Below the pieces are notes generated by a model, which worked only from the letters and a program-made list of their open reading frames with translations, did no database searches and was not told the origin of the DNA. A DNA stretch of 64,000 nt, from NCBI RefSeq assembly GCF_040938485.1, contig NW_027270975.1, forward strand, positions 1,302,001 through 1,366,000, given 5' to 3'. Both the position numbers and the translations under genes were made by a program. Position 1 is the stretch's first letter; each line of letters starts with the position of its first letter. Source of the stretch: Diadema antillarum (Eukaryota). Of this stretch, positions 5,701 through 48,108 are shown one piece after another.

Positions 5701-8700
5701 TTAATGTGAGTAATCTTTTGCACTCAGCCAAGATGAGTTTCATGTGTTTTTAATTCAGCAGAATCAAAACATTAACTACTGGAATATATAGCAATAGCCA
5801 TGGGGGCAGTCCAGAAACTTCACACCATATGGAGTTCAACAAATATTAAGTCATCAACAAAGACCGAATTATACAGGGCACTAATTCTCCCTATATTACT
5901 ATATGGAGCAGAGACATGGACACTCAGGAAAGAAGATGAAAACCGCCTGATGACTTTTGAAATGACATGCCTGCGGAAAATATGTGGCGTAACACGAATG
6001 GATAGAATAAGGAACACCACAATAAGGAACCAATTGAATGCAACAAGAACAGTATTAAATAGAATCTCCCAAAGAAGACTACGATATTTTGGACATCTCA
6101 TACGTATGCCGGTAACACGCCTTCCTAAATTAGCAATGGAGGGAAGAATTTCTGGTAAGAGACCACAGGGAAGACCACCAAAGAGATGGACAGACTGTGT
6201 AAAAACAGACTGTAGGAGCACAAACATATGCTCACTAGTAGAAGCCTGTCATCTAGCCAGCAACCGCCAAGAATGGCAGGACATCATGAAGCGGATGCCA
6301 CCACTCAACCCTTTGTTGGAGTGAAAGGCATAGGTCAAGGTCATATATAGCAATCAAAAATCTTTGCATGTTTTTATTTTCCACTCGTTTCTGGTTGTGC
6401 GAAATGTGCAAAAATTTCAACTCCACGAAAATGTCCAGTTACAGTATTTCTTTGACCTATCTCTCAGAGTCACTTGAACACAGAGTGGACTTTCCTTTTA
6501 AATAAGGGAAAATCTACAGACCAACAGAATTAAACTGGTGCACACATCAGAAATTATCTAGGTCTGAAAGGGATGCAGATGAGTGAATTATATTCCACTG
6601 GCTCTAACTTTTTTTTTTCTGCAAATGAAATTGGTAGTGGGGGTGAAGATAATCCCTGACCTTTGAAGTAAATGTTAAGGTCATGAGGAAAATTTCAATC
6701 TGAAAAGAGAAAACTTGGTCCAGAAAAGTATCTCATTTGCTATCAGATAAAAAGTATCAGGCAATATCTCCATGAAGAGATAATCTTAATAAAGAGTGAC
6801 AATGTGTCTCGTACAATCATCACCTGATGTGGGAACACACTTGTTTATAAGGCAGGAACAACATGCAAGTAATATGCTTAGTTGTCCAGGTAACAGTACT
6901 CTCCCCCTCCCTGCTATTATAAACAACCTTTCCATCCCACCCCCTCCCAAAGATGCTCCCTTGCTATTCAGTTCCTTTCCTAACTTTGCCCTCTTCTACT
7001 CCTTAAACATCCTTGTCACCCCCACTCTCCACCAGCTTGATGTACCCCTTACCTACCCTTGAACACCACTCTTCTCTACCCTCCAAACACCCTTCTCTAT
7101 CCTTTAACTACCTTACCCTACCCCTCAAACTCCTTTATCGACACCCCTGATACCACCAGTTCTCCCTATATGTCTCAAAAACTCCAAGAATGTGAGAGGT
7201 CTGATCCCACAGTGATGAAATTATACGAAGAGAATGATTACAATGAAACTGCAGAAGTAGTTGCAAAAGCTCTAGCTCCAACTGAGTTAAAAGTAAGCAG
7301 CACCAAATGTTACCATGGTTTCATTAAGTCTGTTGGAATTCTGTCAGCCAAATGATTGTGTTTGCCTCACATGCAGGCTTTCTGTACTGACAATTGATGA
7401 ATGTTGTGCCTTCAATTCACAAAATGCCAGAAACTGAGACTTAATTTCTGCGCAATGGGAGATACGAATTGAACTAGAAAAATAATAATAAAAACATTTT
7501 TCCAAGTTTCCATTACATTTAACCTTTTCATATCCTGATTTCTAAAAAGTCAGGAAAAAAAGAATGTCATACATTTCATTCATTCTCCCCATGCAAATTT
7601 ATCCAGACATCACCAGAAGGTAAGAGTGGTGTAGGATCACCCAGTGAGAACCGCCGCCGAAGGTCACCGTCTGCACCTTCCACACCAACCTCACCAACCC
7701 CTCCTTCAACCCCCAAGTTGCAACCAGTGCCTGTGACCAAAAAAATGATGCAGCAACAGCAACAGCAACCACAACAACATCAGCAACAGCATCTGCAACA
7801 CCAAGAATCACCCAAGCTGCAACAGGCAACTGTCACCGTCCAACACTCTGTGGCCAATGTACAACACGCACCGACCACCATGAACATGATGCAACCACAA
7901 GTTACGCACACCAAGACCATCGGAATCAAGTGGGTCACAGTTTTTTGTCACCAAAACTGTCCTGTATTCTAGTGGCTACACCAGTCTTGATTTCCCTTGT
8001 GATACATGACACAAGGAGGTTTTGTAACGTGTGTGAACAAATGACAATAAGTTTGAAACTGTCCATTTCCATTATCATCTCCCGTAACTTCACTTCAAAT
8101 TAATTTTCTTATGCAGTCATAATAACTTGGTTTCAAACCAACACATAGAAGCCTGCATAACGTCTGTATCAATGTAGATAGATGTACATGTAACATATAT
8201 TTTGAGAAATAAAAATTATTTGGTAGAGGTAAGTGCACTTTCTTTCTCTTCTTCTCAGGAACCCAATGGCAAATGAAATTGATAACATCAGTATGAAAAT
8301 CATTTGACATCATTAGCCAGAATACACATTGGAATATCACTGAAACAGTATTATGTTTCAATCCATTTAAACAAAAGTTGTGGGCAAGAATTATATTTTC
8401 ATGTCAAAGTGTTATGTACACAACGAATATAAGTAAATATCTGGCCAGAATAAAGGAGGAAACTGCACACAGTGTGTGTGAACACAATCTTGTGCATGTA
8501 AGTTTTGTACATGTTCACTCTAAAGATCCCAAACAAGAGGGGCAATCAAGGATTGAAATTGTATGACTTTTGTCTTTGCCAAAGACTCAAATTCCAAATG
8601 AGGGTATCTTTGTCAGTTTTACGCATAATATATAAAATTTTTGTTGCTTTTCAGGAGTGGAGATGGACTTGTAAGGTACTCGTTTGAAATAGAAGTGGAT

Positions 8701-11700
8701 TACATTACTGAGAGATTAATTGGTAAGTTGCACACATCAATTATGTTGCAGAAAATAAATACTGTAAAACGAGGAATGTTTGCATGCATTTTAATTTCAC
8801 AAATTTTGTGAGCGCCAAGATTCGCGAAATTCAAATGCACGCGAAAGTTCTTGTCGACACTATGTGCATTGAATGCCAGTGGCAGTTCGCGAAAATTTCA
8901 TGCCGCAAAAAAGGCTGTTGGCTCCAATTCGCAAAAGATTCATGCCGCGAATATATCATGTTTTACAGGACTGTGCAATAAAAGTTTTGGTACATTTTGT
9001 GTCTTGATAGAGACATACTGTAAAAGTGGATATTTTCGCGTGACTAATTTTTCACGCTTGGCCGGGTTAGAAGAGTTTCGCGTGTTTTTAATTCCGCGGA
9101 ATCAAGACATCAGGCACAGGAACATATATGGCAAGCAAAAATATTCACATGCTTTTATTTTCGCGCTAGTTTCTGGTTGCGCGAAATGTGCGAAAATTTC
9201 AACACCGCGAAAATTTCCACTTTTACAGTACATGATACTCTTGTCAACGACAAAGATGGTTTGTATAAGATGTTTATTCATTTCAAGCATTCAATTGCAA
9301 TTCTTAGACTAAAAAAAAAAAACACAGCTGTTCAAAGTATTGCGATCATTAATTTCATGATTGGGATTTCTCCAGCGAGCTACAGAGTTGCTATGGTAAC
9401 CCTGTGTTAGGGAGTATCTAAATCATCGTTAAAAATCATGCGTTTGCCCTTTGAAAATCATTCGTGAAAAATGAGTAACCTTCATAGTACAGTGCAATAA
9501 TTTTCTCAGCATTGAGTTTCGATATGGGCTGCCCCCATATTACTCTTGTACTGTAGAATCTGACAGTAGATATGTATAGATGGATATAGATATGATCCCC
9601 AGTTTCAATGGACTTTGAGATTTGATGCTGCCACAACAATTCTCATCCAATTCAGATACCACAGGCTTCTAACAGATCAGTTACATCTCTATGTATAACT
9701 TCATGGTAGTGGTGATATGACTTGTAATCGTGTCGTAGATCTTATTCTACCATGACCTGTGTGACAGCAAATATGTTTTTAATAATCAGAAGGTTTGAAG
9801 TATAATTGCCTCATCATGATATGTGAAGTTAACTCCATCTCCCTCATTCTATCATGGTGTGTTTTTCCTCACATTGCTTTACCTTTGTCTTCTCTAGCCG
9901 TGTCTTTCCCCGCTGGTGGTCTGGAGAACCAGTACCGTAGCAACCTGCGGGATGTCGTACGGATGCTACAGAACAAGCATCAAAACAGCTACGTCGTCTT
10001 CAACCTCTCCAGGAGGCGACATGATATCGCCAAGCTCAACCAAGAGGTGCACATTTATTCTCTCTCTTCCCCTCCCACTCCCCCTCCCATGCAAGCATTC
10101 TCCCTCCCCATTCTTCTCCCTTTCTCTAGCTGTCCATCAACTTCATCTGACTTTTTTTTATTCTTAGCCAGCTCTTCAATCTCTCCTCGATTTACAAATC
10201 AGGGTGTTTTTGTGTGTTTTTAATACCTTGGTTATCTCTGTGTGCTGCTTGTTTGTTGCTATTGAGGAAGTGACTATAAATAGTCAAATCTGACTGACTG
10301 AAATAACTATTTCTTTATTCCTTTAATCTGTGATTGGCAAATACAACTAAGAGACATGTTGTTTTTTGGTTACTTCATAAAGTATTCAAGTAGTGATGTG
10401 TCACAGAATATCAAAATGCTGAGTTACAGTCTTTTCTGTTCGTGAAGATACATGTATAAATATCAAACAACCCCATTGTGTCAATGAACTTTTCTTGTCA
10501 CTCTGATATTTCTTCATCACTTCATGTTCTGATATTTCTTCATCACTTAATGTTAAGCAGAGTGGAATGCAAATCAAATGACATGGGGGATTGTATTGCC
10601 AGAAGCCAATGTGAAATGTTGATGCAAAACAAAGACAAAGAGCTCTCATTGAACCCTTGAGGAATATGAGGCTTTTGGATCAGTTGCTAAATGCAGTTTG
10701 ATTTGTTGCAAGTTTCTTCATCAGAGAAGGTGATTCATGGCAAATGCTGGCCAAGAGGGAGAACAGATCTTTATTTAATGAATTCATGTCACATTACAGT
10801 CATCAAAACCTCATTGAAGGCATACTAATGATGTCAGTCATTCATATTCCTTTCACATCTTGTTTCTAAAAGTGTACTTCCAACCAGCGATGAATCCATT
10901 AATGCAAATAATCATCATTTGCTAAGTATCATGGGGTTGGAAATTGAATCTTAGAGAGAAATGCATTTATCTAATCTTACAAATAAAAGTGCAGGACACA
11001 TGCATCATTTACATTCAGCCCATGCTGTATATATGTGCCATTTGAATGATGAGACTGATTCATGTTTTCTGTGATTACAAGAAGAGTTAATTGGCACAAT
11101 TAAAGAAATCTATTTAAAAAATGATTGCAGTCAAGGCTCATTTGGGAACATATTGGTGATATGAGCTTGAATTTTACATATTCTAGTCCAGTATGCCATT
11201 CTTCAGAGAAGATTTTGAGAAACTTTGGAAGTTTGTTGCCTTTACTGTGCAGCTTCACACCATTTTCAAGTTGTTGGTTTTTCTTTTGTAATGAAGAGTA
11301 AAGTCAGATAGACATAATGGCAGAGACTTCATCAAAATCAGACCTGAAATCAGAAACTTACAGAATTGTAAAGTTGCCCCATGTTTTCACAAGTCAGTGA
11401 ATGTTAGTCACAACCACGTACTCCGAATGGCAGAGAAGATTTCATTAGTAATGCATACTTTACATGTATGCCTTTCAAGAGATCCATCCACAGCGCAAGA
11501 TATTGAAATTCAAAAGATTGTGAGCCACTCTTTTTTTTTGTATTTTAACAAAGGATCTGAATGTGTTCCCACAAATTAAGAGAAGTGAATGAAGAATATA
11601 CATGGTATATTTTGTTATGACTAGTGACATGTAAGGTTACCTCCTTTTCTGAACTATTTCGATGACATTGAGAATATCGCATTTTTAAAAAAGTCTTAAT

Positions 11701-14700: not shown

Positions 14701-17700
14701 GAGAAAATCTTTCAAGCATCTGTAAGATTTTTCATCTTTATATTGTCCCATATTTCCTGTTTTGAAGGAAGTTTGATGGGCGTGTTCAGCAATGATTCTC
14801 TTCTTACTTTTGAGGATGTTTGCACAGAGATGTTGAAATATTGCTTTTTTTTGTCTGTTTCTTTAGTACTGTACCCGAAGGAACTAGTCGATTTGCCATC
14901 ACACCGGAAAGGGCCCTATCTCTGAGGGGAGATATCCTTGTAAGTACGACAATAACATGTGTTTGAGCCCTCACAGAAATAACATTATTGAGATTTCTTG
15001 AACATCAAGAACATGAACATGTGGGACCTAATGATCCATCACTAACTAGGGATAGCCTAATACTATTGACCTATCATAATTGAGTAGAAATAAAGGGTTT
15101 ATATTGGATGTAGATTGCTTTTGAATAACTATTGCAGCATTTAATGTGTATCAAACGTAATTCACAGAGCACACACACACAAAATAAATATCTGTAAATT
15201 GTAATGTGGTACATACTGCTATGTCTTATGTTTTACAAGTCCAACTCTTACAAAATTAACAGCTTGCAATAATATTTACCTCCTATAACTCAAGTCCATA
15301 GTATCTCATCTCCAAGGTGGGAAATTGCAAATTTTTCTTTAAAAGTTATGATATGTCTTTCTCCTTTCTCATTCAGGGCACCATTTTATGAAAGCTGTCA
15401 GCCCAAACAAGTTGTTAGTCTCTGACAGTTACCATAGTAACAGCTAGTGACCAGAGCTTCTCAGCCAATCAAAACCAAGGATTTTACTAATATTGTCAGA
15501 GACTGACAACTTTCTTGAAACAGTTCCCTGAATTCAACCACTTGTGAAATTGCCTTACAAGTCCCAATTTGTGAAGTATGTGGTGTATGCAGTGAGATAG
15601 CATGATATTCAAAGCCATCAAAAGCTTTTCCAGTTGAAAATGATTGTTGATCTAACCCATTATTTTACCATGGGTGATTTTTGCAAGTGAAAAGTTATCT
15701 AGAGACATAGAAGTGAAGCCTTGAAATTGTCACTGCAGGAGAAGTAACTGAACATCCAAATCTGAAAACTGATGAGGTATCTATTTGTGGTATGGTGCAG
15801 GTGAAGTGCTATCATAAGAAGTTCCGTTCAACGACACGAGACACTGTGTTCAGGTGCCAGTTTCACACAACAGCCGTCATGGAGTATAGACTGGTCTTCC
15901 AGAAGCAGGAGCTGGATGATGCATGCACAGGTGAGAAGACAATCACAAATCTCTGTCAGTGGGACTATATTGATGTTATACCACTCCTACCATTCTTTCT
16001 GATTTATTTCACAATATATATATTCTCTCTTAACCTTTGACTTTTATCTTTCATATTTTATCTCTTATATTTCTGGATATTTGTCAATCTATCCATTTGT
16101 TGTTGTTTTTTTGTCTCCCTCAATTTCCTTTTTCAGTCTATTTGCTTAGATGATGGTCAGTCACTTCTCTGTCACACATTTCATGGTAATTTTTAAAAAA
16201 AATTATATCAATATATACATTGTATTTAGGTATATGAAGCTTTTGTTGAATATCTAAATTAGCAGAACATTCTGCATATTATTTTTGATACAGCTTGTGC
16301 AAGTAAAAAAAAACACTTTCTTTATGTTGGATTACATATTTTCCTCATCAGATGCCCGTTTCCCAGACTTCACTAAAGTGGAGCTCATCTTCTCTTCTTC
16401 CCACGATGCCTTGCATGGAAGTGACTACGTCCCTGGGGCATCCTTCCCATCAGAGCTCATTGATGATCCCCTCATCCGATGGGACTCCTATGAGCACTTC
16501 AATGACATCATCGAGGGACCAGAAGGTATCTGTGATGTGCATACAGCTATCAATAGGGAGCTTTAGATTTTTAGTGGCACTATGAAGAATGATGATTTTT
16601 GTGGGTTTTTATTCCTCAATATAATGACCAGATAATGTATGCCTACATGTCTGACAGTCTCTTGAAATACTGATGGAAGAAAGCAGTTTTCCCTTTGTTT
16701 TGAATCCAAGACATTTGATTTGCCATTTAGCGTTCTTTATTAATGCAGATATTTCCTGGTGCAATTAGTATAACACATTAATATTCTTTTCTCTCTTCCT
16801 CTGCGGGTATCTCCCTACCAGATGGTGGTGGTGATCTCAATGAGACATCTGGCAACAACAACAACAACATGATCCTGGACATCCCTCACAGCCCCGCCCC
16901 AGATGGAAGCCTTTATGCCCAGGTCAAGAAAACTCCATCCCCGGAGCAGTCGCCCATCATCCCCCACCCCAAGCTGACTAATGGTGAGAGTAGCAGCCCA
17001 GTCCCTTATGTACTGTCCCCAGATCAGGCCCCCACAGTGAATGGACCACGGGAGGCACCAAAGAAGCATATGGACTATCGGGAGAGGATGGCCCTTGATG
17101 AGCTCTTGAAGGGGATTACTGGGGAAGGGACGGATGGTGGCATGGTGGTGAACAACAACACCCACTGGCAGGCACCACCATCACCAGAGAACCAGGTATC
17201 ACTTTGATCTTACAATACATTGGGCAAAGATGTGGGTAGAGGGCATGTCAATCAAAACAGCCACACCCAGCATATCCATGATTTCTCTAGGGTTTAATCC
17301 TCCATCCTGGTTAAGTTGGCACCATTCTTATATGATCATGAGTTGGCATGGATTTCTCATGGTCAGTCAATGTACTCACATTTGATTTCTCATTGGGGCT
17401 AGCAAGTTAGAAAAAGCTCCTATGGCTTATTTTCAAATCTTCCCTCTATAGCATAGAAATTTGGTCATGAGAAAAGCAAAGAGAAGTACTGCGAAGACAA
17501 TAACCAGTTCAAAAAGAATCACCTAGCATTAGTTCCTGCACTCTAGAATGTAATGATGGAAATCATAACAGCAATTATAAAAGCCAAACCAAAACAGAAC
17601 AATACCAATCAACAAGAGTTTGCTTGCCTTGATGTATTGATGTAGCATAGCCAATGCTGCCTAAATTCAAGCAAAGTTTTTCTTGGGTTTTACGCAAATT

Positions 17701-20700
17701 ATAGAAAAATATCTTCAAGCTTCTTCCACCTTCTTGCTGTCTGCTGAAAATTTCTCTCAAAGGAAAACAGTAGATTTATTCACAAGGGACACTTGTAAGT
17801 GTCAAAGTTTCAGTAGTTGTAAAAAAAGTGTGCATTGAATGAGTACACACTATGCCTAATCAGATATATTGTTACAACATACTTTTAGTTTCAGAATTTG
17901 TATGATATATGTATGTACAGGTACATGTGTATTTCTATGGACTTAAAGAAAAGTCAGGTAGCAAAGATACAAATGTAAAGTTTCTGCATCCTTCCAACTG
18001 TTCATGTCTGTGGATTCCCTCCCACCAGGTTCTTCATCATGATCCTGTCCACACTCGGCGTATCGTCAGTGTGAGTGAAGACCTGCGACATGCTCCAATC
18101 GCTGTGTCCAAACCCAAGCCACCTCCTGTCAAAGAAGAGGTTAGTGAAGAGAATACCAGTGTAAACAACGCCTCACCAAAGAAATCACCGGCGGCTCGAA
18201 AGGCATCAGTAGATGCGGAAAATCCCTATGCGGAAATCACTGATGCAATGCAGCTACAGCAGCAGCAGCAGCAGCAACAGCAACAGCAACAGTTGCAGCA
18301 AAACCCTAACAGGAATCCCCTTGGACCCCAGCAGGAGAGCATTAGTCCTGTGATCCAGCAGAGGCAGGAACACACAGCACCCCCTATGGTGAATGGAGGT
18401 ATCAATGTGCCAAGGACTGTGGAGCAGCACAACCCTACATACGAAGTCACACCAAAGGGTGCCCACCAACGGACGCTGACAAATGGAGGAATAGACCAGA
18501 ATGGACCAGTGAACTTGAATCCAGCTCAGAACCAGGCAAACCTGAATTATAGTAGAAGTCCACAGGTGAACTACAATCCAGGCCAGATTAGCCATGGACC
18601 AGTGCCGGTGAACGCTGGGCCAGCCACACCGCACGTGGCACAGATGAATGGCCCTGTGGAGACCCCTATCGTACCCAACTCAGTAGCAAGTAGGGTGACA
18701 GAAAGGACTCCAACCCTCAACCCCTTAGTGAATGGCCCTACGTCACCACCAACATTTAGCAACAATCAGTACCAGCCCCAACCACTCAGAGCCAAGGAGG
18801 AGCGATTCCAGCTCGTAAGGAAGGACCCCAACACCTTTCAGCAGCAGGTGCAGCAAGTTCCAGCTCAGCCCCAGCCCCAGCCCCAGCCCCAGCCTCAACC
18901 CCAACCCCAGTTCCAGCCCCAGCTCCAACCCCAGCCCCAGCCCCTGCTCCAGCACCAGCCTCAGCCCCAGCCCCAGAGCCAGTACCAACTCAAAGCATCC
19001 CCTGTGGAGTTTGTCCAGACCAGCCCCATTGGTTCCAGTCCTGGAGAGGATGATGGGGGATTACACTGGCTCCGGAAGCAGCAGGAGAAGCTTCGGGAGA
19101 AACGAGAGAGGGAGCAAGGGAGAGCCATTGTCAGGGAGTCGCCTCCCATCAAGGGACCCAGTGGCAGTGGTCCGATGCAGGAGCGGGTAGAGCCTGTATC
19201 CGTCACCCCAGTCAGCGCTTCACCCAAGCTGCGAGTCCGCTTTGAGGGGGACTCAAACTCTCCCACATCACCACCTGTAGCCTCGCCTCCAGCAGCAAAC
19301 ATTAATCAAGACCCTTCAGCATCCTGGCTGGAAAAGCAGCAGCAGAAACTGCGTGAGCGCCATGCAAATAATCAACCAGTGCCCATTAATCAGGCACCAT
19401 ACGTTTCTACATCAACCACTCCCCTCAACAATGCAATGGCCCCATCCCATGACCCTCTGTCACTGACTCCACCCCAAAGCGGGGGCGTCTCAGCCCGACG
19501 AGGCATCTCACCTTCCCCTCTCTCCATCTCAAATGACCTGGAGCGTTCTCTCGATGAACTCGGCAGTCTCAACACTGGCCAGCCCTCTGGGGCATATGTC
19601 CAGCGCACCACCCCAACCACTAACCAGATGGAATGGGAGCCGCATGAGCGTCCACTGAACAGGCAGCTGTCTGACCTAACACATGACAGGTTTCGAGACC
19701 CTGTCTACCAACGTCCCATTGCTGACCAGACTCCCAAGAACCAAGGTATTCACCATACACCTGCTACACCATATGATCCAGTGCCACCAATTCTAGCATC
19801 CTCTCAGCTCTACAGCGGGTAAGTATTACATATTCATGTTCAGGGCTTTACAAAAATGTAAATAACTGCTAATGGAACAAAAAGTGCTTTCGTAGGGTGT
19901 TTTCCCCCTATTTAGGATACATGTGTTTTGTTGTTGTTTTATAGTTTTTAGCACCAGGAAATTTCAAAGTAGGCCATATTGTGTGAAACTATAGTGTCAT
20001 TTTCACATTTCAGGAAATTTCAGAGTAGGCCGTATTGTGTGAAACTATAGTGTCATTTTCACATTTCTGTTGTTATCGAAGTCAGTTTGTTTTTATATCA
20101 CATATTTGAATGTTTTTTGAAAGGTAACATTTTGAAAATCCTTGGAACTTTTGAAGATATCAAGATGGGTTGTACTATCTGTAAGTTTTCAGTTATCGTC
20201 TTGATTACAATGAAATGGTACTGTTCTTAAGTGAGAGTCATAGGAATGATTCCAGTGAATTCAGATTGGTAAGATTTTAATCATTTAGTATTTGGAAATG
20301 CATATATGAGCTGGTTAAGTAGTGAAATGAAGTGATATTAGTGTATTGGTATGAAATTTAAGTATTGTTTAGGACTGTAGTACCCTGACCAATTTTTCAG
20401 AATGACAAAATGGCACAAGTTGTTTCTTCATCAGTCATAATGGGAGAAGATCAGAATAGATGCAATGGTACTAATAAAGCATTGTAATTATTGCAATAAG
20501 TAAAGCAAAAGAAGTGAGAAACAATTATCAAATAATGCTGAATGTAATCTTATCACAGCAGGCTGTGTCAAGACTTCTCATCCCTTATTTGTGGTTTCAA
20601 AAATCATGTTTAAAAGAAAATATTGGATATTGACCACAGTTGGCCCTGTGACCAGTTTTACAGTCTGGCATGCTGGGTAGCATTACAGTGAAATCACTAC

Positions 20701-23700
20701 AGCGACCATCCTTTATATACATTGTAGCTACAATAAAAACCCTGAAATATTACAAATCGGGTAATTTTTTATGACTTAGTGATAATTAAGTAGTCCTAGA
20801 TTTTTTTTTGTCACATGGTGCACAAATTTGTAGCATTCTATTGCACACACTGCCCTGCTTGTGCAGAATAAACACATACTAAAAAAAAAAGTTGGGATAA
20901 CTCTATATTCTAATAAAAGTTAACTTGGAAAGGGCTTGCTGGATACCGGTAATTGATTACTTTGAGTGGTGTCACATTTCTGGACTGAGTTGGTTTGGTC
21001 ATTTCATATATATATCACATTTTATATCAGTCCTAACACATATTTATGCACATTTGTTAGCAGTGTCTGTGCTTTCTCCACATGGGATTTCCTTGTACAG
21101 TTTAATTGACCTCATTGTGAATGATAACAACCGTAACACATGGCATGAAATTGAAAAACTTTCCATGATCATGTTGGAGTAACTCTTGCATGCATGTGAC
21201 TTTGTGCTGCTACTAGTTAGTCAATCCATACTATATCTTCCAATATGATTAGAATAATTCATAAAGAAAGCAATAAGAGCATAACTGGCAAGTTCACTGA
21301 CATAATTTGGGAAGTCTGCTCACAGTCAAAAGCAATGCTTACCAGGAAATGGAATAGAAAGGCAAAAGAATTTGCTTTGTGCTTTCCATCTAAGCTGAAG
21401 CCACAGTATGAAAGATATGAATGTAAAAATTGTCAAACAAACAAGATCTTTGGCCAGTCTGTGTTCTCAAATTTTACAGTATCATAAACAATCATGAAAA
21501 ATCATGAAGAATATTCAGAGGAAATATTATGTTTGCACTGTTGTATGCCTTCATGGGAATTTTGGTGTTCAAATTAACCCAAAGGCCTAAATTCACAAAG
21601 GTAGTATCAAGAAATTCTGTGGATTAAATTTAGTGCATAAGAACTAAAAGAAGTGCAAAATAAGCATACATTTCACATGTGCATATCAGCTCAAGTTAAT
21701 TATTGGATGTCTGCTGTTGTACTTGATGTGACATGCACATTTATGCACTCAAAATTTGCAGAATTCTTGGACTTTTACCATGACATTCAAACTACCCTTG
21801 TGAATTCCAGCCATATAGTTGCAGTGTTATGTATGAAACTGACTTCTGTATGTATGTATGTATTCACACACCCACATCATGAATATATTTATCTTCTCTT
21901 CCGGTCATTTTGTATCATGATGATGTTGATAACATGGTATGCCACACTGATTAACCTTTCCATTTAATCTCATCCTTCTTCCATGGTCTCTTGACATCCT
22001 TGCTGTTTTTCTTGGTCTGTGTGTGTTCACCCGCCCTTCTCACCTGTGACTTTTCACTCACGCATCCTTCGCCAACCTGCAATATAATCCATCTGTCGTC
22101 ACTACTGACATGATGCACAAATAAAGACGCAGTGATCACCTTGAACAGCAGCAGTTGAGGCGTATCCAAGCACGCAGTGCGCTTGCATCACAGGTTGGCA
22201 TATCGTATGGAAGCAGCTTGATTCAAGCTGGGGCTAGCTCTCCTCATGGTATCAACATGCCCTCCAAGGTCAGCTCTGGTCCTGTCTCCTTGGATTCAGG
22301 CTACGAATCATCCTCGCATCAGACATTATCATCCAATCTCTCATCAGTTGCTCCAGCAGTGATGAGCAAAAACGTGACACGATTTGTTGGAAAGGATGGT
22401 TCTGAAACAACAATTACAAACAGTACAGAACGCAGGAAGAAGACAATACAGGTTTTCCCTGTCACCAACCAGGACGGGTCTCAATCGTATCCATCCATTC
22501 CTGTTACTCAGTGGAAGTCAGATATTGGTGCACAGCCAAATGCTAACTCAGTGTCTCAAGGAAAACCACCAATCAATATCCATGTCAACCCATATGAAGA
22601 AGTTCATGACTTTCATCTGAAGTCACAGGAAAGTAGGATTCCCAATGGAGGACAATACACTGCAGGAAACTTTCCAAAGCAAGGGTCAAGTTCCTCAGCA
22701 GTCTCAGCTGCAGGCCTTCGGTCACCATCGTCAGCCTTTGTGCCTATCACTATCTCCACCTCCACTGCCAGGGATCATGTCTATGACACCTCTATCCTTT
22801 CCTCCTCCTCTTCCTCTTCCACATCATCTCTTCCAGCTCTTTACCATAGTAACCCTCTTCCTCCCCCTCCTCCAACTGGTACTCTTCCCCATCACCAAAC
22901 TAACAGTGGTTATGGGCACCACAACCACCATCACCACCACCAAATTCACCAGTCCAGCCACACCCAGTCTTCCAATAATTGCCAGGATAAGCCGCCACAG
23001 CCTTCCCTCACACAAACCCCTGTCATGCCCTCCAAAGGCCCCAGGGTGGGTGAATATGAGTTTCTACCTCAGGGATCAGTTTCCAAGTCAAATGAGGGAC
23101 CACACTCTGTGGCATCCTCTCCTGCTCACACACTCCTCAAGTCAGCATTCCGGCAGGCTGACCTTCTACTCACTCCATCCAGTGTGCCAGGTCTTTCAAA
23201 CCCTCTCATTCCAAACCAGAGACCAAAAGTTAGCTTCCAACTGGAGGAAGACCACAAGGGGCTCCCACAAAATGGGGTTCCTCCTCAAAAGTTAAATTTT
23301 GAAAAAGAGACTGAACAGCCCCCAAGAGCATCTTCAGTCCCTCCCTCTCTCCCTTCTTATGATTGGGTCATGACCAGGATAAGGGAGCTTCGTAAGGGCA
23401 CTAACATAGACAAGCAAAACACAGGTGAAGAGTTGTTGGGTCAGTCCACTCACAACAGGGGAGAGGTTAGGTCTGAGGGTAACCAGAAAACATCAAGCAA
23501 GGTGCATTTTAGCTTGAGGAATGAGGTAATAGCAGGGAGCAGGGTTGGGCAAGGAAATCGTACAAATGATAGTAAGTCAGAGGTCGTGCAGCCCATTCCA
23601 CAGCGCCCCCACATGTCGCAGTTTGAGAAATTGACAACACTCCCTCCAAAGGGAAATGGACGGTGTAGGACCCCACAGGACACAGGCACCCTGTCCAGAA

Positions 23701-26700
23701 AGTCCCATTCTCATGATCCACATCTGCCGACCTCTGGCAATGCCCCTATCAAGACAGAGGATAAAGATCGGTTGAATGTTCATGGCTTCAATCTCCATGG
23801 CAACGATTCTCACAACAGGCAGCAGATGACACCATCACCAGCATCAGTTGTCACACAGCGCTTTTTCCCAAGCAGCCCAGTTCTTCCAAGCCAAAACACA
23901 AATGCAGGGACTTTGGGAAGGATACAACATCCGGAGGAAAGAACACACGTGGTCATGTGGTCAATTCACAGAACACAAGATTTCAGCATCGCGAGCAGCA
24001 GTTGCTGCAGTCGGAACGTAAAGTGCGCACATTTAATAAGCAATCCCTGCATGTTGAAGCCACTAACCCCCAACAGAGTGTGTCCTTTAACTCCAGCAAT
24101 CCCTCCTCCTCTTCCTCTGCTGTGAGATTGCATGGTTCGACACGCCCGAGTTTTTCCCGAAGCTTGAGCAGCTCAGGGTTGAATGAACTTGTGTATGCTG
24201 GTGCCGAGACTAACAATAATGAGGTCACTGGCACGGGTGATGCATTTTCGTCCCTTGATGATGCTGTCAAGATGTTGTCGCACTGGAGCAGTGAGATCCA
24301 AAAACTGAGTGACCCATACCGTTCGGATGACTCTAACCGTAACACGCATGCTGTAGAGTGCAGAGGTCAATCTCCCGCTCCCACTCACCACCATCATCAC
24401 AGCAGCCAATCAGATGCCCGGACTAACTCCCATCACCACACCCACACCCTCCAATCAAATGGGAGCTACCATTTCACATCTCAAAACTTGACCAATCACA
24501 GGCCACAGGCCACATCCACGCCCAGGAAGGGGCTCGATGAAGTGGATCTGCACATTGACGAACCCACGGAGACGGACATCCCGAAAGGTGTGGTGGCCGA
24601 CCGGACATGTGAGTAGAAGAATATATACTTTTTCATAGATGACCACTTTTCATGGGATTCCATCAGGCAGAATAGAATTGTCCATCTCTGTAGTTTTTCT
24701 CCCTCAATTATGAATGATTCCCTTCTAAGGGTTAAACCAAAATAAAGCAATTATTAGGCTTCAGTACTTTTTAAATGTTTCAATGGTGTTAAACATGAGA
24801 GATAGGTATCTGCAATCCATCTGTAGGAAGCCAAGAACAAGAATGAAGAAGTAGAATATAATGACAAACTAAGTCTAACCTTCAGCATTATCACCTTCCA
24901 ATTTTTGTTTTTGATGACAATAAACCCCATAAGAAAACTTTTGAGGAGGAAAACATGATTGAAAAATATGATTATTGCTAATACCTTTCCCTGAAAGTAA
25001 TTTTTTCTGTTCATCTTTTTGTTTGTTTCACAAAAGACTCCATGGAAAGATCACTGAGCCCCCCTCCAGCCCAGCAGACAAATTCTCGCCCACCTCGCCG
25101 CACCAACTCCCAATCAGGCTATGATTCAGACACGGGCATCCAACAGTACTACCGCCCACCACGCCGGCGCAACCTGGTGGACCCCAGCGCAGAAGTGTGG
25201 TTGCAGAACCCTGGTGGCCTTCCAAAGAAAGTATGTCATCGGCCTCACCATCAAAACCAGAAACTTGACAATCCCAATAAAATGTAGTGTTCATATGTGC
25301 ATATTTCTGGCCATTTAGTTTTTATGCAAAACTGTGTCATCCCTTCATACTCCTCATAAGATATTATAGGTGATAAGTAATGAAATGTCAATAGTGACAG
25401 TCATTGAATACTGATTAACTTTCATTCCTCCCAGCATGAATGATACTGGATTTACCCCCATTTTCTAGAACCCATGAAGATATAGGAAGACCACCATGTT
25501 TATAAAACATGTTGCATCATTTCCTGTTGTTTTTCTTTCTCTTCTGTGATAATCTATCACAGGAAAATGAGCACTGGAATAGAACAGAAGGTCTGAAGAA
25601 ACAGAATGGTCAGAAACCAGTTGACTCCTATGACCTGAGCTCATCCACAGAAAGCATATCGGGAGCCAAGACGCCCAAATTTCCAGTCGGACCTCGTGCC
25701 TATGCCAACATGACAAAGACTTTCATCGTCATGTCTGGGGCACCCCCACATGGTATGGCTGAAGTCAGTACTAAGATCTAGAGAGAGTAGAAAAGAACAG
25801 CAAGGCTAAGCATTTATGATCATGGCAACAAAACAATCCTTAATACCTCTGTCAAAACATAATATATATGCAAAGGTGACATATGTTACCACAGACAGAA
25901 TGAAGGAACCAGAAAATAGTGTCATGGGAAAGTGGGAAAAAGTTACATGGACTTGCAGGAGTAGTGTGGACAAACACTGCAAACTTGTTGGCACAGAAAT
26001 ACGAGAAGAATATGTATTTAGTGGAGATTAGTAGAAATGTTGACATCAACATAACTTTACATATCATGTATTTGATATAATTTTGCCCACTCGAGTACAT
26101 TCTATGTTTTGATATAATCAAAATGTTGATTTTGATTGGTACCTGGGACTAACATCATAGGGAAAAATAAAGATATGATGAAACATATTTCTCTCTACCC
26201 CATTATATGTATACAATATACCATGTACTATAAAACATGATATATTTGCGGCATGAAATTTTCACGAATTGGAGCCGATGGCTTTTTCGTGGCATGAAAT
26301 TCTGGCAAATTGCCACTGGCATTTAATGCTTATAGTGTAGACAAGAACTTTCGTGTGCATTTTCATTATGTGAATCTTGGCACTTGCAGAATTCGCGAAA
26401 TTAAAATGCATGCAGAGACTCCAACTCTCCCGTTTTCGACGGGAGATCTCCCGCCAATTTTTGCAAAATCTCCCGTTCTCCCACTTGAGATTTAATTTCT
26501 CCCGCCCTGGCTCTGTGTCTCCCGTTGGAAAGGATTTCTTACTTATTGCTTACTTATTGCTAAAAAAAAGCCTTTAATAGCACCAGAGAGCATCAAGAAC
26601 CCTAGGAACTTCGCGCTTCGCACACATCAACTTGGAGTCTCCCGTTTGCTAGGGGTTTCAGGCGGGAGAATCTCCAGATCAGAAGGTGCTTGGGGTTGGA

Positions 26701-29700
26701 GTCTCTGTGCATGTGAACATTCCTCGTTTTACAGTATATAAATATGTATATCATCCTTTGTCCGTTTCTCATGATGTCTCTGTCTTTTGTCTCTCTCTTT
26801 CTCTTGTCCTCCTGTCTTTTTTTCTTTGTATTTTTTTTTTATATTTCTCTCTCTGACAGGACCGGATGAGCCCCACCCCTTGTCCCCCATGAGGAGACAG
26901 GACAGTGACACATTTGACAACTCTTCTTTGCCAGCTGATGACAGTGGCCCAGAGATGTATGCCCCGCCCCCATCAAGGGCAGAACCAGTTGTGCCTACTC
27001 CTACACCTGCAGTGCACTTGTACACACAACAGGCTAGGACTCCAACAGCACTGGATGATGTAAGCCTCGCAATATGTTTGTTTTTTTCCAGGGCAAGAAA
27101 TGTTTTCTCCCTGTTTATTTCATTTACTTTTGTGAATATCAGAAAAACTCACAATGATGTATTAAACATTGCCAAATTAATTTTTGCCAGGATATACCAT
27201 ATTGCTTCCATCACAACTTTATGCTTCTCAAATCACAAAATTTTGAATATACCCTCTGTACTGCACAGATTATGCAAATACACCCTTTTTCTCCATGATA
27301 CAGATATGATAAGATTAATCTTTAGGGTGGTGGCTTAGAAGTTTGCTATTCCATGTAAGACTGATAGTGTGAAATCAGCAACTTTGCATTAACATCTACG
27401 ATCAATTCTCTGTGATAAGCAAGATTGACAAAGCATTAGTGTCATGTCTGAAGAGGAGCGTTTGAATCCCTCCCTTTCCCTCNNNNNNNNNNNNNNNNNN
27501 NNNNNNNNNNNNNNNNNNNNNNNNNNNNNNNNNNNNNNNNNNNNNNNNNNNNNNNNNNNNNNNNNNNNNNNNNNNNNNNNNNNNNNNNNNNNNNNNNNNN
27601 NNNNNNNNNNNNNNNNNNNNNNNNNNNNNNNNNNNNNNNNNNNNNNNNNNNNNNNNNNNNNNNNNNNNNNNNNNNNNNNNNNNNNNNNNNNNNNNNNNNN
27701 NNNNNNNNNNNNNNNNNNNNNNNNNNNNNNNNNNNNNNNNNNNNNNNNNNNNNNNNNNNNNNNNNNNNNNNNNNNNNNNNNNNNNNNNNNNNNNNNNNNN
27801 NNNNNNNNNNNNNNNNNNNNNNNNNNNNNNNNNNNNNNNNNNNNNNNNNNNNNNNNNNNNNNNNNNNNNNNNNNNNNNNNNNNNNNNNTCTTTTCCTTCA
27901 GGATGCACTGACACAGTTGGAGTATCTAGAGAGTGAACCTTGGATGGGAAAGAGTCCCCAGGTTAAGACCACTCCCAAAAGGATGGAGGCGGAACCCTGG
28001 ACCCTCCAGATTCCACAGTTGACTCCGACCAGTACAACATCCATCACCACTGGCCCAATACCAGCCATGATGACTGGAGCTCCATACTCCACAACTACCA
28101 CCACCACCACCAGTGTCCAGTGGAGGAGAGAAGGTAGCAACCAACAGCCGGTTGAGGTTGCCCCCATTGAGGTAGACCTTAGGGGCGCTGAGGAGGCAAG
28201 GAGAAAAAAGAGGTATGTTTGGCTTTTAGGGATGAAGATCAACAATATGTTTGTACCCACAGAAATATTGTTTGATGGTGTTTTCATCAAATTTCACAAA
28301 ACAAAAATGTTGTATTGTCTTCTGTTCTTTCTTTTTCTTTAATTCAGGCATTTACCAGGATGGAATGTTATAGTTTTTTAGTCATTTGTATGTCAAGATA
28401 GTTAGACTGTGATGATTTCATTTTTGTCATTTAGCTTCTACATTGATTTAGAGTGTCTTTCACTTTGTAGGACTTTTTTTATTAGTCAAAGAATAAAAAC
28501 ACATATTTGGTGTTGTTGTATCATATTTGATAGATATCTATGAAAGAAATGTTTCTCTTTAAACTTGTAGTAGTTTCATATGTGGCTTTGAAAAGATTAT
28601 GTCAGTATCGTTTGCCACTGACCGTGCTTGTTTACTATCTATATCTTTTATATCACATAAAGCTTTTGTGTTATTTCATTGCCTTACCCTGTGCTGAAAT
28701 AATTAATGCTTCTTACTACCATTCACTTTACCTATGCTTTTTTTGCCTCAGAAAGCAAATCTCTATAAAACAACAAGATAGTAGTCCTTGTTTGGTTATG
28801 GTGATCAGTGTGCCAGAATAAAGAAGAGTTGTTGCAATGCAAAATCACAACCATGAACATTTATTTTGGTCATGGTATCGCATTTACATAATGAATTCTC
28901 AGAGCTAAGAAAGTGATGAAATTGAAAGAAAATAAGAATCTGTCAAATGATTTTTATTTTTGTCTCCTGAAATGGGAGGCAGTTTGATTTGACAGCTTAC
29001 CTGACACATGTGATACCAATGTAATGTTCCTTGGAACTCTTCAAAATTTGAACTTCAGAACAGTTCTGTTCATTTGCAATGTAGAGATGTCATGCAAATG
29101 AGGGCTATTATTTCATAACATGGCTGCAATTGCAAGTTGACTCAGCTCTAAAATCACATTCATGTTATTGTCATCATGCAATTGAAAAAAAAAAAACCAA
29201 CTATATATATAAAGATATACCTTAAAAATATATATTTAGCTTGTCTCATTTCTTGCAATTCATGATTATCAGGTAATTTTGTGAGTGGTCAAATTCATAC
29301 ATTCATGTCAGGATCAGAGTTAATATTTTTGCATGTTGCAATATTTTGCAAAAATGAAAACCATGCAAAATATATGGTCCATACAGTATGTTAGTCAATG
29401 TCTGCTTCATTTATATATTCTTGTGCATTCTCTGTGTCTTTCTGTTCTTTTCACAAAGTCCTTGTATTCTTTCTAATAGTATCCTGCTATTGTAATGACT
29501 TTTTATTTCATAGTCCTCCACCAACAATGAAAATTGATGATCTTTTAGAGGAGCATTTTCCAACTCCGTAGGTCTTTGCACCAAGTTTCATGTGTCTCTG
29601 TTCATCCCTCACAATTCATTCATTAACATAAAATCCCCCTAATTCATGCCTACCCCTAGGACATAGTTTGCCATTTTCATTTGTAAAGGGTTGCAATTTG

Positions 29701-46837: not shown

Positions 46838-47085
46838 NNNNNNNNNNNNNNNNNNNNNNNNNNNNNNNNNNNNNNNNNNNNNNNNNNNNNNNNNNNNNNN
46901 NNNNNNNNNNNNNNNNNNNNNNNNNNNNNNNNNNNNNNNNNNNNNNNNNNNNNNNNNNNNNNNNNNNNNNNNNNNNNNNNNNNNNNNNNNNNNNNNNNNN
47001 NNNNNNNNNNNNNNNNNNNNNNNNNNNNNNNNNNNNNNNNNNNNNNNNNNNNNNNNNNNNNNNNNNNNNNNNNNNNNNNNNNNNN
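46838..47085. other. Assembly gap (248 N)
   Basis: Run of N. Confidence 1.
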
Positions 47086-48108
47086 ATGACGTGTAGGCAA
47101 TTATCAATGGCAAACAATGGATTGTCATAAGTTAAATTATGATATGCTTGGCTTTTTCTCATTTACTTTAAAACTTGAACTTCATGGCATTATATTGTGT
47201 GCAAAGGAGAGTGATTGGCAAATTTTCAAGCAGTTAATGTTGCTTATTTTCAGTCTTTCTCGGTTCATTTGGCACATGGAAGGGATACATTGGCCACTGG
47301 TAATGCAGTAGAAGAATGACAAGATTGAATTTTTGGTTTTAAGTTGCAACACTTACCTGAGGGAGTATTATTCTACCTTATCTACATGTACATTTTTCTA
47401 GAAGCTGCAGTAAACAAAAATATGGACATTTTTGAGAGCATCTAAATTTCCCACAAGGTATTTTTTTTCTCTCTCCATTACAGAACCCAATGCAATCTCC
47501 ACAAGAGATGTGTTTTATCCTATTTATTTATCCATTTTGAAAGCAGAGGACTTTCCAGAAAAAGCTATTGTCCATAGGTTGCATGTATATGTGTATGTGT
47601 GTGTATATATATTTATGTATTTATATAATGTGTGTATCTAGCTTTTGAACAGGACTGCAATTAAATCTAAATTCTGCCTAGAATAATGTGAGATGTCTAA
47701 AAGGCTTTCTTAAAAGTCCCAGTGCTTCCAAGGATAAATGTAGTATAATGCAAGTCTATAAATCTTCCGAAGCACAAAACAAAAATGCAATTGAATGCAT
47801 TTGACAGGAAATGGACCATCTTGTGTGTTCAAATAGTTCTTGACCAGGAAATAGATATTGGAATGCTCCTAAAAGACAAAAATCATGTCTGCTTGACTTA
47901 GAACTGCAATATGTTTTGTTCTTGACTGGCAGGTAAAGTCAAGATCCCAGCAGCCTTGAAATCCAAACAAATCGAAAACATTTTTACAAAACTGAAATTG
48001 CACATTAAGGAACACTTTAGTCTATTGAGAAACCATTATTTAGTCAAGATGCTTTTTGCTTTCCACTGTCATGTAAACATTACCATTACATGGTCAGGAA
48101 ATAAAAAC

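What the first reader, a model, noticed from the sequence alone, without database searches (positions are those of the whole stretch)
23765..24125. Reading-frame switch inside the 2.5-kb tensin exon: about 360 nt open in two frames
Seen: the exon enters in one frame (acceptor 22133, open to TGA 24123) but its strong exit donor (T|gtgagt, 24608) works only in the -1 frame, open from 23765 to 24616. Exons 22133-28212 sum to 3371 nt, one short of a multiple of 3. Protein-like composition appears to cross over near 23925-23940 (...NAGTLGRIQH then SGGKNTRGHVVNSQ...). Inference, four options: (a) a 1-nt assembly error or null allele, the most parsimonious; (b) alternative donor A|gtaagt at 23571 (phase 1) splicing in frame to 25037, with an internal acceptor such as 23881 giving a second sub-exon that is frame-incompatible with the first, hence mutually exclusive; (c) a truncated isoform ending at TGA 24123 with AATAAA at 24741, lacking SH2-PTB; (d) programmed -1 frameshifting, though no canonical XXXYYYZ heptamer was seen.
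Basis: partly seen in the sequence, partly recalled or inferred. Interest (0 to 1): 0.72.

Follow-up and report, generated by a model that had tools for sequence, protein, structure and literature searches.

The report
One missing G on one haplotig
The apparent reading-frame switch in this sea-urchin tensin exon comes from a single G missing in this copy of the sequence; the other haplotype in the same assembly and two related sequences read the exon as one open frame, so this is ordinary, not recoding.

Summary
The entry frame closes at TGA 24123-24125 and the -1 frame is open from 23765 to 24616.

The cause is one base. The assembly (Diadema antillarum GCA_040938485.1, published as retaining both haplotypes) holds a second, collinear copy of the window on contig C1241. 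Within the exon that copy differs by five SNPs and one extra G (GGG against GG at window 23951-23952). With that G the exon is a single 825-codon frame from acceptor 22133 to donor 24608.

Two relatives' ORFs, about 50% identical, align without a break across both sides. The frame-A tail and the frame-B head have no similarity to them.

The switch lies at 23951-23952, not 23925-23940.

No evidence supports programmed frameshifting, an intended truncated isoform or mutually exclusive sub-exons.

Whether the missing G is a consensus error (about 0.57) or a real heterozygous frameshift allele (about 0.38) needs reads. Together, the 1-nt indel reading stands at about 0.95.

The scan's only other note on this matter is the same stretch (s1-229831), not other DNA.

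Interest is low.

The parts
22133..24608 (+). Large central (disordered-region) exon of a tensin gene; 2476 nt in this copy, 2477 nt in the other haplotig
   Evidence: Splice sites read. The C1241 copy translates as one 825-codon frame. Relatives P0001 and P0002 align over it.
23951..23952 (+). GG run where one G is missing relative to the other haplotig (GGG); this is the true point of the frame change (C87:1325951-1325952; extra G near C1241:149113)
   Evidence: Pairwise alignments. It is the only indel in the exon, with no SNP between 22655 and 24861.
23765..24125 (+). Stretch open in both frames (the finding); a by-product of the 1-nt deletion and a stop-poor sequence
   Evidence: The frame-B head (23765-23950) and frame-A tail (23952-24122) have no similarity to relatives (E > 0.8).
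24123..24125 (+). Premature TGA reached in the entry frame after the deletion, 483 nt before the exon's donor
18344..19818 (+). Conserved part of the upstream large exon, which fixes the entry frame (ends GG|gtaagt, phase 2)
   Evidence: tblastx to relative locus L011 3-1301; ORF list.
25037..25254 (+). Downstream exon that fixes the exit frame (phase 1 entry, T|AC)
   Evidence: tblastx to L012 5231-5443, 76% amino-acid identity, in the 25039 register.
15768..15932 (+). PTEN_C2 (tensin-type C2) exon of the same gene
   Evidence: PF10409, 46.1 bits against a cut-off of 27.1.
9921..10082 (+). PTEN-like phosphatase-domain exon of the same gene
   Evidence: phmmer to PTEN chains 5bug and 1d5r, E = 4e-8, chain residues 29-85.

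Best explanation
This contig (C87) lacks one G of a GGG run at window 23951-23952 inside the 2.5-kb central exon of a sea-urchin tensin gene. The true gene has one continuous frame across the exon. The two-frame overlap is simply what a 1-nt deletion looks like in a stop-poor sequence. The deletion is more likely a consensus error of a low-coverage, uncollapsed HiFi assembly than a real allele. Shown: the indel, the intact second haplotype and the continuous frame in relatives. Inferred: that the missing base is an error rather than a genuine heterozygous variant.
For: A search of the window's own genome finds exactly one other copy, on C1241, that is 1 nt longer. C1241 is collinear with the window over 3.7-64 kb, and both of its ends map to C87, spanning C87:1,172,291-1,806,041. 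Every Pfam hit in the genome comes in contig pairs. G000's size of 1,754,659,819 bp equals that published for GCA_040938485.1, which the authors show retains both haplotypes: 84.4% duplicated BUSCOs, 2.52% heterozygosity, about 11x HiFi per haplotype, Racon polishing and Merqury QV 44.5 (PMC13511894). In the exon the only indel is +G in C1241, and with it the exon is one 825-codon frame. Relatives P0001 and P0002 align continuously. Their frame-A match ends at 23879-23882 and their frame-B match starts at 23885 or 23984. Flanking exons fix the entry and exit phases so that 2477 nt fits and 2476 nt does not. For error against allele: the published QV predicts about 0.07 errors per kb of pairwise alignment, against 0.48 isolated 1-bp indels per kb observed. 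That makes errors about 15% of such differences. Real indels should be strongly depleted in coding sequence while errors are not, which gives roughly 50-75% error for a coding one. Isolated 1-bp indel density is nearly flat (0.38-0.60 per kb) across a nine-fold range of SNP density. That fits a component independent of divergence.
Against: The context is only a 2-3 nt run, not the long homopolymers where HiFi consensus errors concentrate. Hifiasm usually keeps true heterozygous indels and corrects random ones. This species is very heterozygous (1.4% SNPs here), so real frameshift alleles are not rare. No reads were available, so error against allele is a prior-based estimate.
Confidence: 0.57

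Rival explanations
1. A genuine heterozygous 1-nt deletion: a frameshift (probably null) allele of the tensin gene carried by the sequenced individual. The mRNA would stop at TGA 24123, 483 nt before the next exon junction, and would probably be degraded, or would give a tensin lacking SH2-PTB. The other allele is intact.
For: The two contigs are true haplotypes of one diploid animal. By the published QV, most isolated 1-bp indels between them are real polymorphisms. The short-run context is atypical of HiFi errors. The deletion creates a perfect GTGGTCA-T-GTGGTCA direct repeat, a context in which slippage mutations arise. An earlier scan note reports another frame-breaking lesion in this assembly (s1-220771, unchecked).
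Against: There is no SNP at all for 2.2 kb around the indel, so the two haplotypes share very recent ancestry here and little time for a mutation. Frameshifts in a conserved gene are selected against. Coverage was low (about 11x per haplotype), followed by short-read Racon polishing.
Confidence: 0.38
2. Alternative splicing avoids the frame conflict. This would use donor 23571 spliced to 25037, or an internal acceptor at 23881, giving mutually exclusive sub-exons, or a deliberately truncated isoform ending at TGA 24123 with polyadenylation after AATAAA 24741.
For: The motifs exist at those coordinates. No RNA data were available to exclude minor isoforms.
Against: The intact haplotype needs no such device. 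Relatives read straight through both motifs as conserved protein (TN.SKS.VVQPIPQRP and PSSP). The frame-A tail is not conserved. AATAAA occurs 105 times in the window against 90 expected.
Confidence: 0.03
3. Programmed -1 ribosomal frameshifting joins the two frames.
For: Two XXXYYYZ-form heptamers lie in frame-A register inside the overlap (23864 and 23912).
Against: Their YYY is CCC or GGG, not the A or U required by established knowledge of -1 frameshift sites. About 0.5 such in-register heptamers are expected by chance. Relative P0001 still matches frame A (HPEER against IPEQR, 23928-23945) after both sites. There is no unusual structure downstream (z = -0.40). The other haplotype and the relatives have a plain single frame.
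Confidence: 0.01

Closest known systems
Single-base indel differences between retained haplotigs in uncollapsed long-read assemblies (consensus error or heterozygous indel)
   Same: A 1-nt length difference in a short run between two otherwise identical allelic contigs. It breaks an ORF in one copy only. The assembly is documented as retaining both haplotypes at QV 44.5 (PMC13511894).
   Different: Nothing distinctive. Only the unresolved question of whether the base is missing in the reads.
Tensin family (vertebrate TNS1-3, invertebrate tensin)
   Same: A PTEN-like phosphatase exon, a PTEN_C2 exon, a long disordered centre encoded by very large exons, and a tensin-type PTB matching solved tensin and TENC1 PTB domains.
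   Different: The central region is lineage-specific. The exon fragments scanned gave no Pfam hit, and the relatives found are only about 50% identical. SH2 was not checked. The PTB exons lie 40 kb beyond the window.
Programmed -1 ribosomal frameshifting (for example viral gag-pol, mammalian PEG10)
   Same: Two overlapping open frames in -1 relation.
   Different: No canonical slippery heptamer, no stimulatory structure, and no conservation of the two-frame layout. An intact single-frame allele exists.

Membership tests
Tensin | N-terminal PTEN-like phosphatase domain | tested here: met
   Window 9921-10082 matches PTEN chains (5bug, 1d5r), residues 29-85, E = 4e-8. Pfam on the whole ORF gave no hit.
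Tensin | PTEN-type C2 domain following the phosphatase domain | tested here: met
   PF10409 at window 15768-15932, 46.1 bits against a cut-off of 27.1.
Tensin | C-terminal tensin-type PTB domain | tested here: met
   PF08416 at C87:1405971-1406144 and 1409321-1409515, same strand. The first exon matches solved tensin PTB 1wvh and 2gjy, E = 2e-15. That these exons belong to the same transcript is inferred.
Tensin | SH2 domain before the PTB | not tested
   Lies outside the window; not searched.
Programmed -1 ribosomal frameshift site | Canonical X XXY YYZ heptamer (YYY = AAA or UUU) in the zero-frame register within the overlap | tested here: not met
   Only T TTC CCA (23864) and T TTG GGA (23912) were found; no A or U triplet.
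Programmed -1 ribosomal frameshift site | Stable stimulatory RNA structure a few nt downstream | tested here: not met
   23919-24040 folds no better than shuffles, z = -0.40.
Programmed -1 ribosomal frameshift site | Two-frame arrangement conserved in relatives | tested here: not met
   The other haplotype and both relatives have one continuous frame.
Assembly consensus error | Variant absent from the raw reads of the sequenced individual | not testable with these tools
   No read data were reachable. Only indirect rates are available.
Allelic haplotig pair | Second contig collinear end to end, at heterozygosity-level divergence, with genome-wide pairing of single-copy genes | tested here: met
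   (the ends of C1241 map to C87:1,172,291 and 1,806,041). Pfam hits are paired. Published BUSCO duplication is 84.4%.

The most novel reading that the evidence does not exclude
The missing G is a real heterozygous frameshift allele segregating in Diadema antillarum. One chromosome of the sequenced animal would then carry a null or SH2-PTB-less tensin. That would be an example of the loss-of-function load carried by a highly heterozygous broadcast spawner.
Probability: 0.38. Interest if true: 0.12.

Novelty: not a real feature. Interest (0 to 1): 0.06.

Why it matters
It matters mainly as housekeeping. Gene models built on contig C87 will truncate or mis-splice this tensin unless the base is checked, and the intact model can be taken from C1241. 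It also shows a cheap check for this genome. Both haplotypes are in the assembly, so any odd frameshift can first be compared with its sister contig. If the deletion is real, it is one ordinary heterozygous loss-of-function variant.

Tried and rejected
- **Pfam on the exon pieces:** no family matched either frame or the neighbouring ORFs.
- **Programmed frameshifting:** the heptamer scan, the fold of the downstream 122 nt and conservation in relatives were all negative.
- **Truncated isoform:** AATAAA at 24741 is at chance density and the frame-A tail is unconserved.
- **Alternative donor 23571 and acceptor 23881:** both lie in conserved, read-through coding sequence.
- **Segmental duplication instead of a haplotig:** rejected because C1241 is nested in C87 at both ends, gene hits are paired genome-wide, and the published haplotype analysis agrees.
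- **Mid-contig probe of C1241:** it landed in a multi-copy repeat and gave no information.
- **Error or allele from indel statistics:** this gives only odds, not an answer.
- **Searches not run:** the large representative-protein search was skipped because the word search already gave spanning relatives.
- **Masked runs:** the C1241 stretch fetched in bulk for alignment includes DNA opposite the window's masked runs (27483-27888, 46838-47650). Those letters were not read, printed or used, and the alignments stop at the N runs.
- **Human sequence:** none of the contigs looked human.

Full report
**1. Observation**

The coordinates are right.
- Frame A (codons from 22134) runs from the acceptor at 22133 to TGA 24123-24125.
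- The -1 frame opens after TGA 23762-23764 and stays open to TAG 24614-24616, just past the GTGAGT donor at 24608.
- The stretch 23765-24125 is therefore open in both frames.
- The neighbouring exons fix the frames. The upstream exon ends GG|GTAAGT at 19818, so it donates two bases. The downstream exon starts at 25037 and needs one base from this exon (T|AC).
- Both neighbours are conserved in related loci, in exactly those registers.
- An exon of 2476 nt cannot satisfy both phases. One of 2477 nt can.

**2. What the window is**

The gene is a tensin.
- There is a PTEN-like phosphatase exon at 9921-10082 (PTEN chains, E = 4e-8).
- There is a PTEN_C2 exon at 15768-15932.
- About 40 kb beyond the window, on the same strand, lie two tensin-type PTB exons. 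The first matches solved tensin PTB domains at E = 2e-15.

The genome was identified as follows.
- Earlier scan notes named the genome as Diadema antillarum. I checked that lead.
- G000 has 1,754,659,819 bp, the exact length that PMC13511894 gives for GCA_040938485.1.
- That paper, and the earlier preprint 10.64898/2026.05.24.727502, describe a hifiasm assembly of about 11x HiFi per haplotype, polished with Racon.
- They report 84.4% duplicated BUSCOs, 2.52% heterozygosity and Merqury QV 44.5. The paper concludes that both haplotypes were retained.
- The paper also reports zero gap length, so the N runs in the window are masks. I left them alone.

**3. The decisive result**

A search of the window's own genome with 23400-24620 returned one other place, on contig C1241, that is one base longer. 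C1241 is the other haplotype:
- It is 682 kb long and collinear with the window from 3.7 to 64 kb, mostly at 96-99% identity.
- Its two ends map to C87:1,172,291 and 1,806,041.
- Every Pfam hit in the genome occurs in contig pairs.

Across 54 kb of alignment there are 740 SNPs and 101 one-base indels. Inside the 2.5-kb exon there are five SNPs, all before 22656, and one indel. C1241 reads GGG where the window reads GG at 23951-23952. With that G, the C1241 exon translates as a single 825-codon frame from acceptor to donor, reading ...GRIQHPEERTHVGHVVNSQNTRF....

**4. Relatives**

A word search with the intact exon (residues 430-825) found two ORFs of about 50% identity, P0001 and P0002, both from ENA sample ERZ26222911.
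- They align continuously over both sides. Upstream motifs include PPKGNTR.RTPQ and PSSP. Downstream motifs include ERKVRTFNKQ.LHVE.TNPQQSVSFN, DAFSSLDDAVKMLSHWSNEIQKLS and LTNHRPQATSTPRK.
- Against the window, their match is in frame A up to 23879-23882 and in frame B from 23885 or 23984 onward.
- The frame-A tail (23952-24122) and the frame-B head (23765-23950) have no similarity to them (E > 0.8).
- The continuous frame is therefore the ancestral state, and the window's copy carries a 1-nt deletion.

**5. The other options**

- **Frameshifting:** two XXXYYYZ-form heptamers are in register (23864, 23912), but with C or G triplets. About 0.5 are expected by chance. P0001 still follows frame A after both sites. 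The downstream RNA folds no better than shuffles.
- **Alternative splicing:** GTAAGT at 23571 is the conserved Ser-Lys codon pair, and the acceptor-like site at 23881 sits in the conserved PSSP. Relatives read through both.
- **Truncated isoform:** AATAAA is at chance density and the tail is unconserved.
- None of these is needed once an intact allele exists.

**6. Error or allele**

This cannot be settled without reads. The indirect odds are as follows.
- QV 44.5 predicts about 0.07 errors per kb of pairwise alignment. Isolated 1-bp indels occur at 0.48 per kb. Errors are therefore about 15% of such differences overall.
- Real indels should be depleted roughly 5- to 20-fold in coding sequence (my assumption, from general knowledge), and errors are not. 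This puts a coding one at about 50-75% error.
- The absence of any SNP for 2.2 kb around the site and the flat indel density across SNP-density classes lean the same way.
- The short-run context and the high heterozygosity lean the other way.
- I put consensus error at about 0.57 and real heterozygous frameshift allele at about 0.38.

**7. Verdict**

The feature is not a recoding or splicing device. Interest is low.

No contig looked human.

Noticed in passing
window 3700-64000 against G000:C1241:129400-186700: The aligned part of the window (about 3.7-64 kb) has an allelic twin contig, with 740 SNPs per 54 kb. Divergence varies from 0 to 5% per kb, and there are variant-free runs of 2.4 kb (18155-20538) and 2.7 kb. 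Any oddity in this genome can be checked against its sister haplotig.
   Followed up: yes
window 24770-24771: There is a 157-bp insertion in the C1241 haplotype, absent here, in the intron just after the large exon.
   Followed up: partly
window 23949-23963: The deletion leaves a perfect direct repeat, GTGGTCA-T-GTGGTCA. In the intact haplotype the first copy is GTGGGTCA. This context favours slippage in replication or misalignment in consensus calling.
   Followed up: no
L012:1416-2074: In the relative's 2x-coverage contig the front half of the same exon changes frame twice (frame 3, then 2, then 3, near 1760 and 2070). These are probably sequencing errors in that low-coverage assembly.
   Followed up: partly
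P0001, alignment A1 columns 330-420: Relative P0001 carries three tandem copies of a unit of about 25 residues (QQYQSTPQKGSSMHPSQVGSRDWNS) in the disordered region, where this gene has none.
   Followed up: no
G000:C1241:290879-296877, 340001-346000, 370283-376282: Three 100%-identical copies of a repeat of at least 6 kb (the 6-kb probe matched in full) lie within 80 kb on C1241, one of them inverted. There are dozens of 90-94% copies elsewhere. This is either a recently active element or an assembly duplication.
   Followed up: no
window 5800-6324: A 174-aa ORF resembles the C-terminal part of a retroelement reverse transcriptase, in an intron of the tensin gene. This is by eye only.
   Followed up: no
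window 27483-27888 and 46838-47650: The published assembly reports zero gap length, so these N runs are masks, not gaps. They were left untouched.
   Followed up: no
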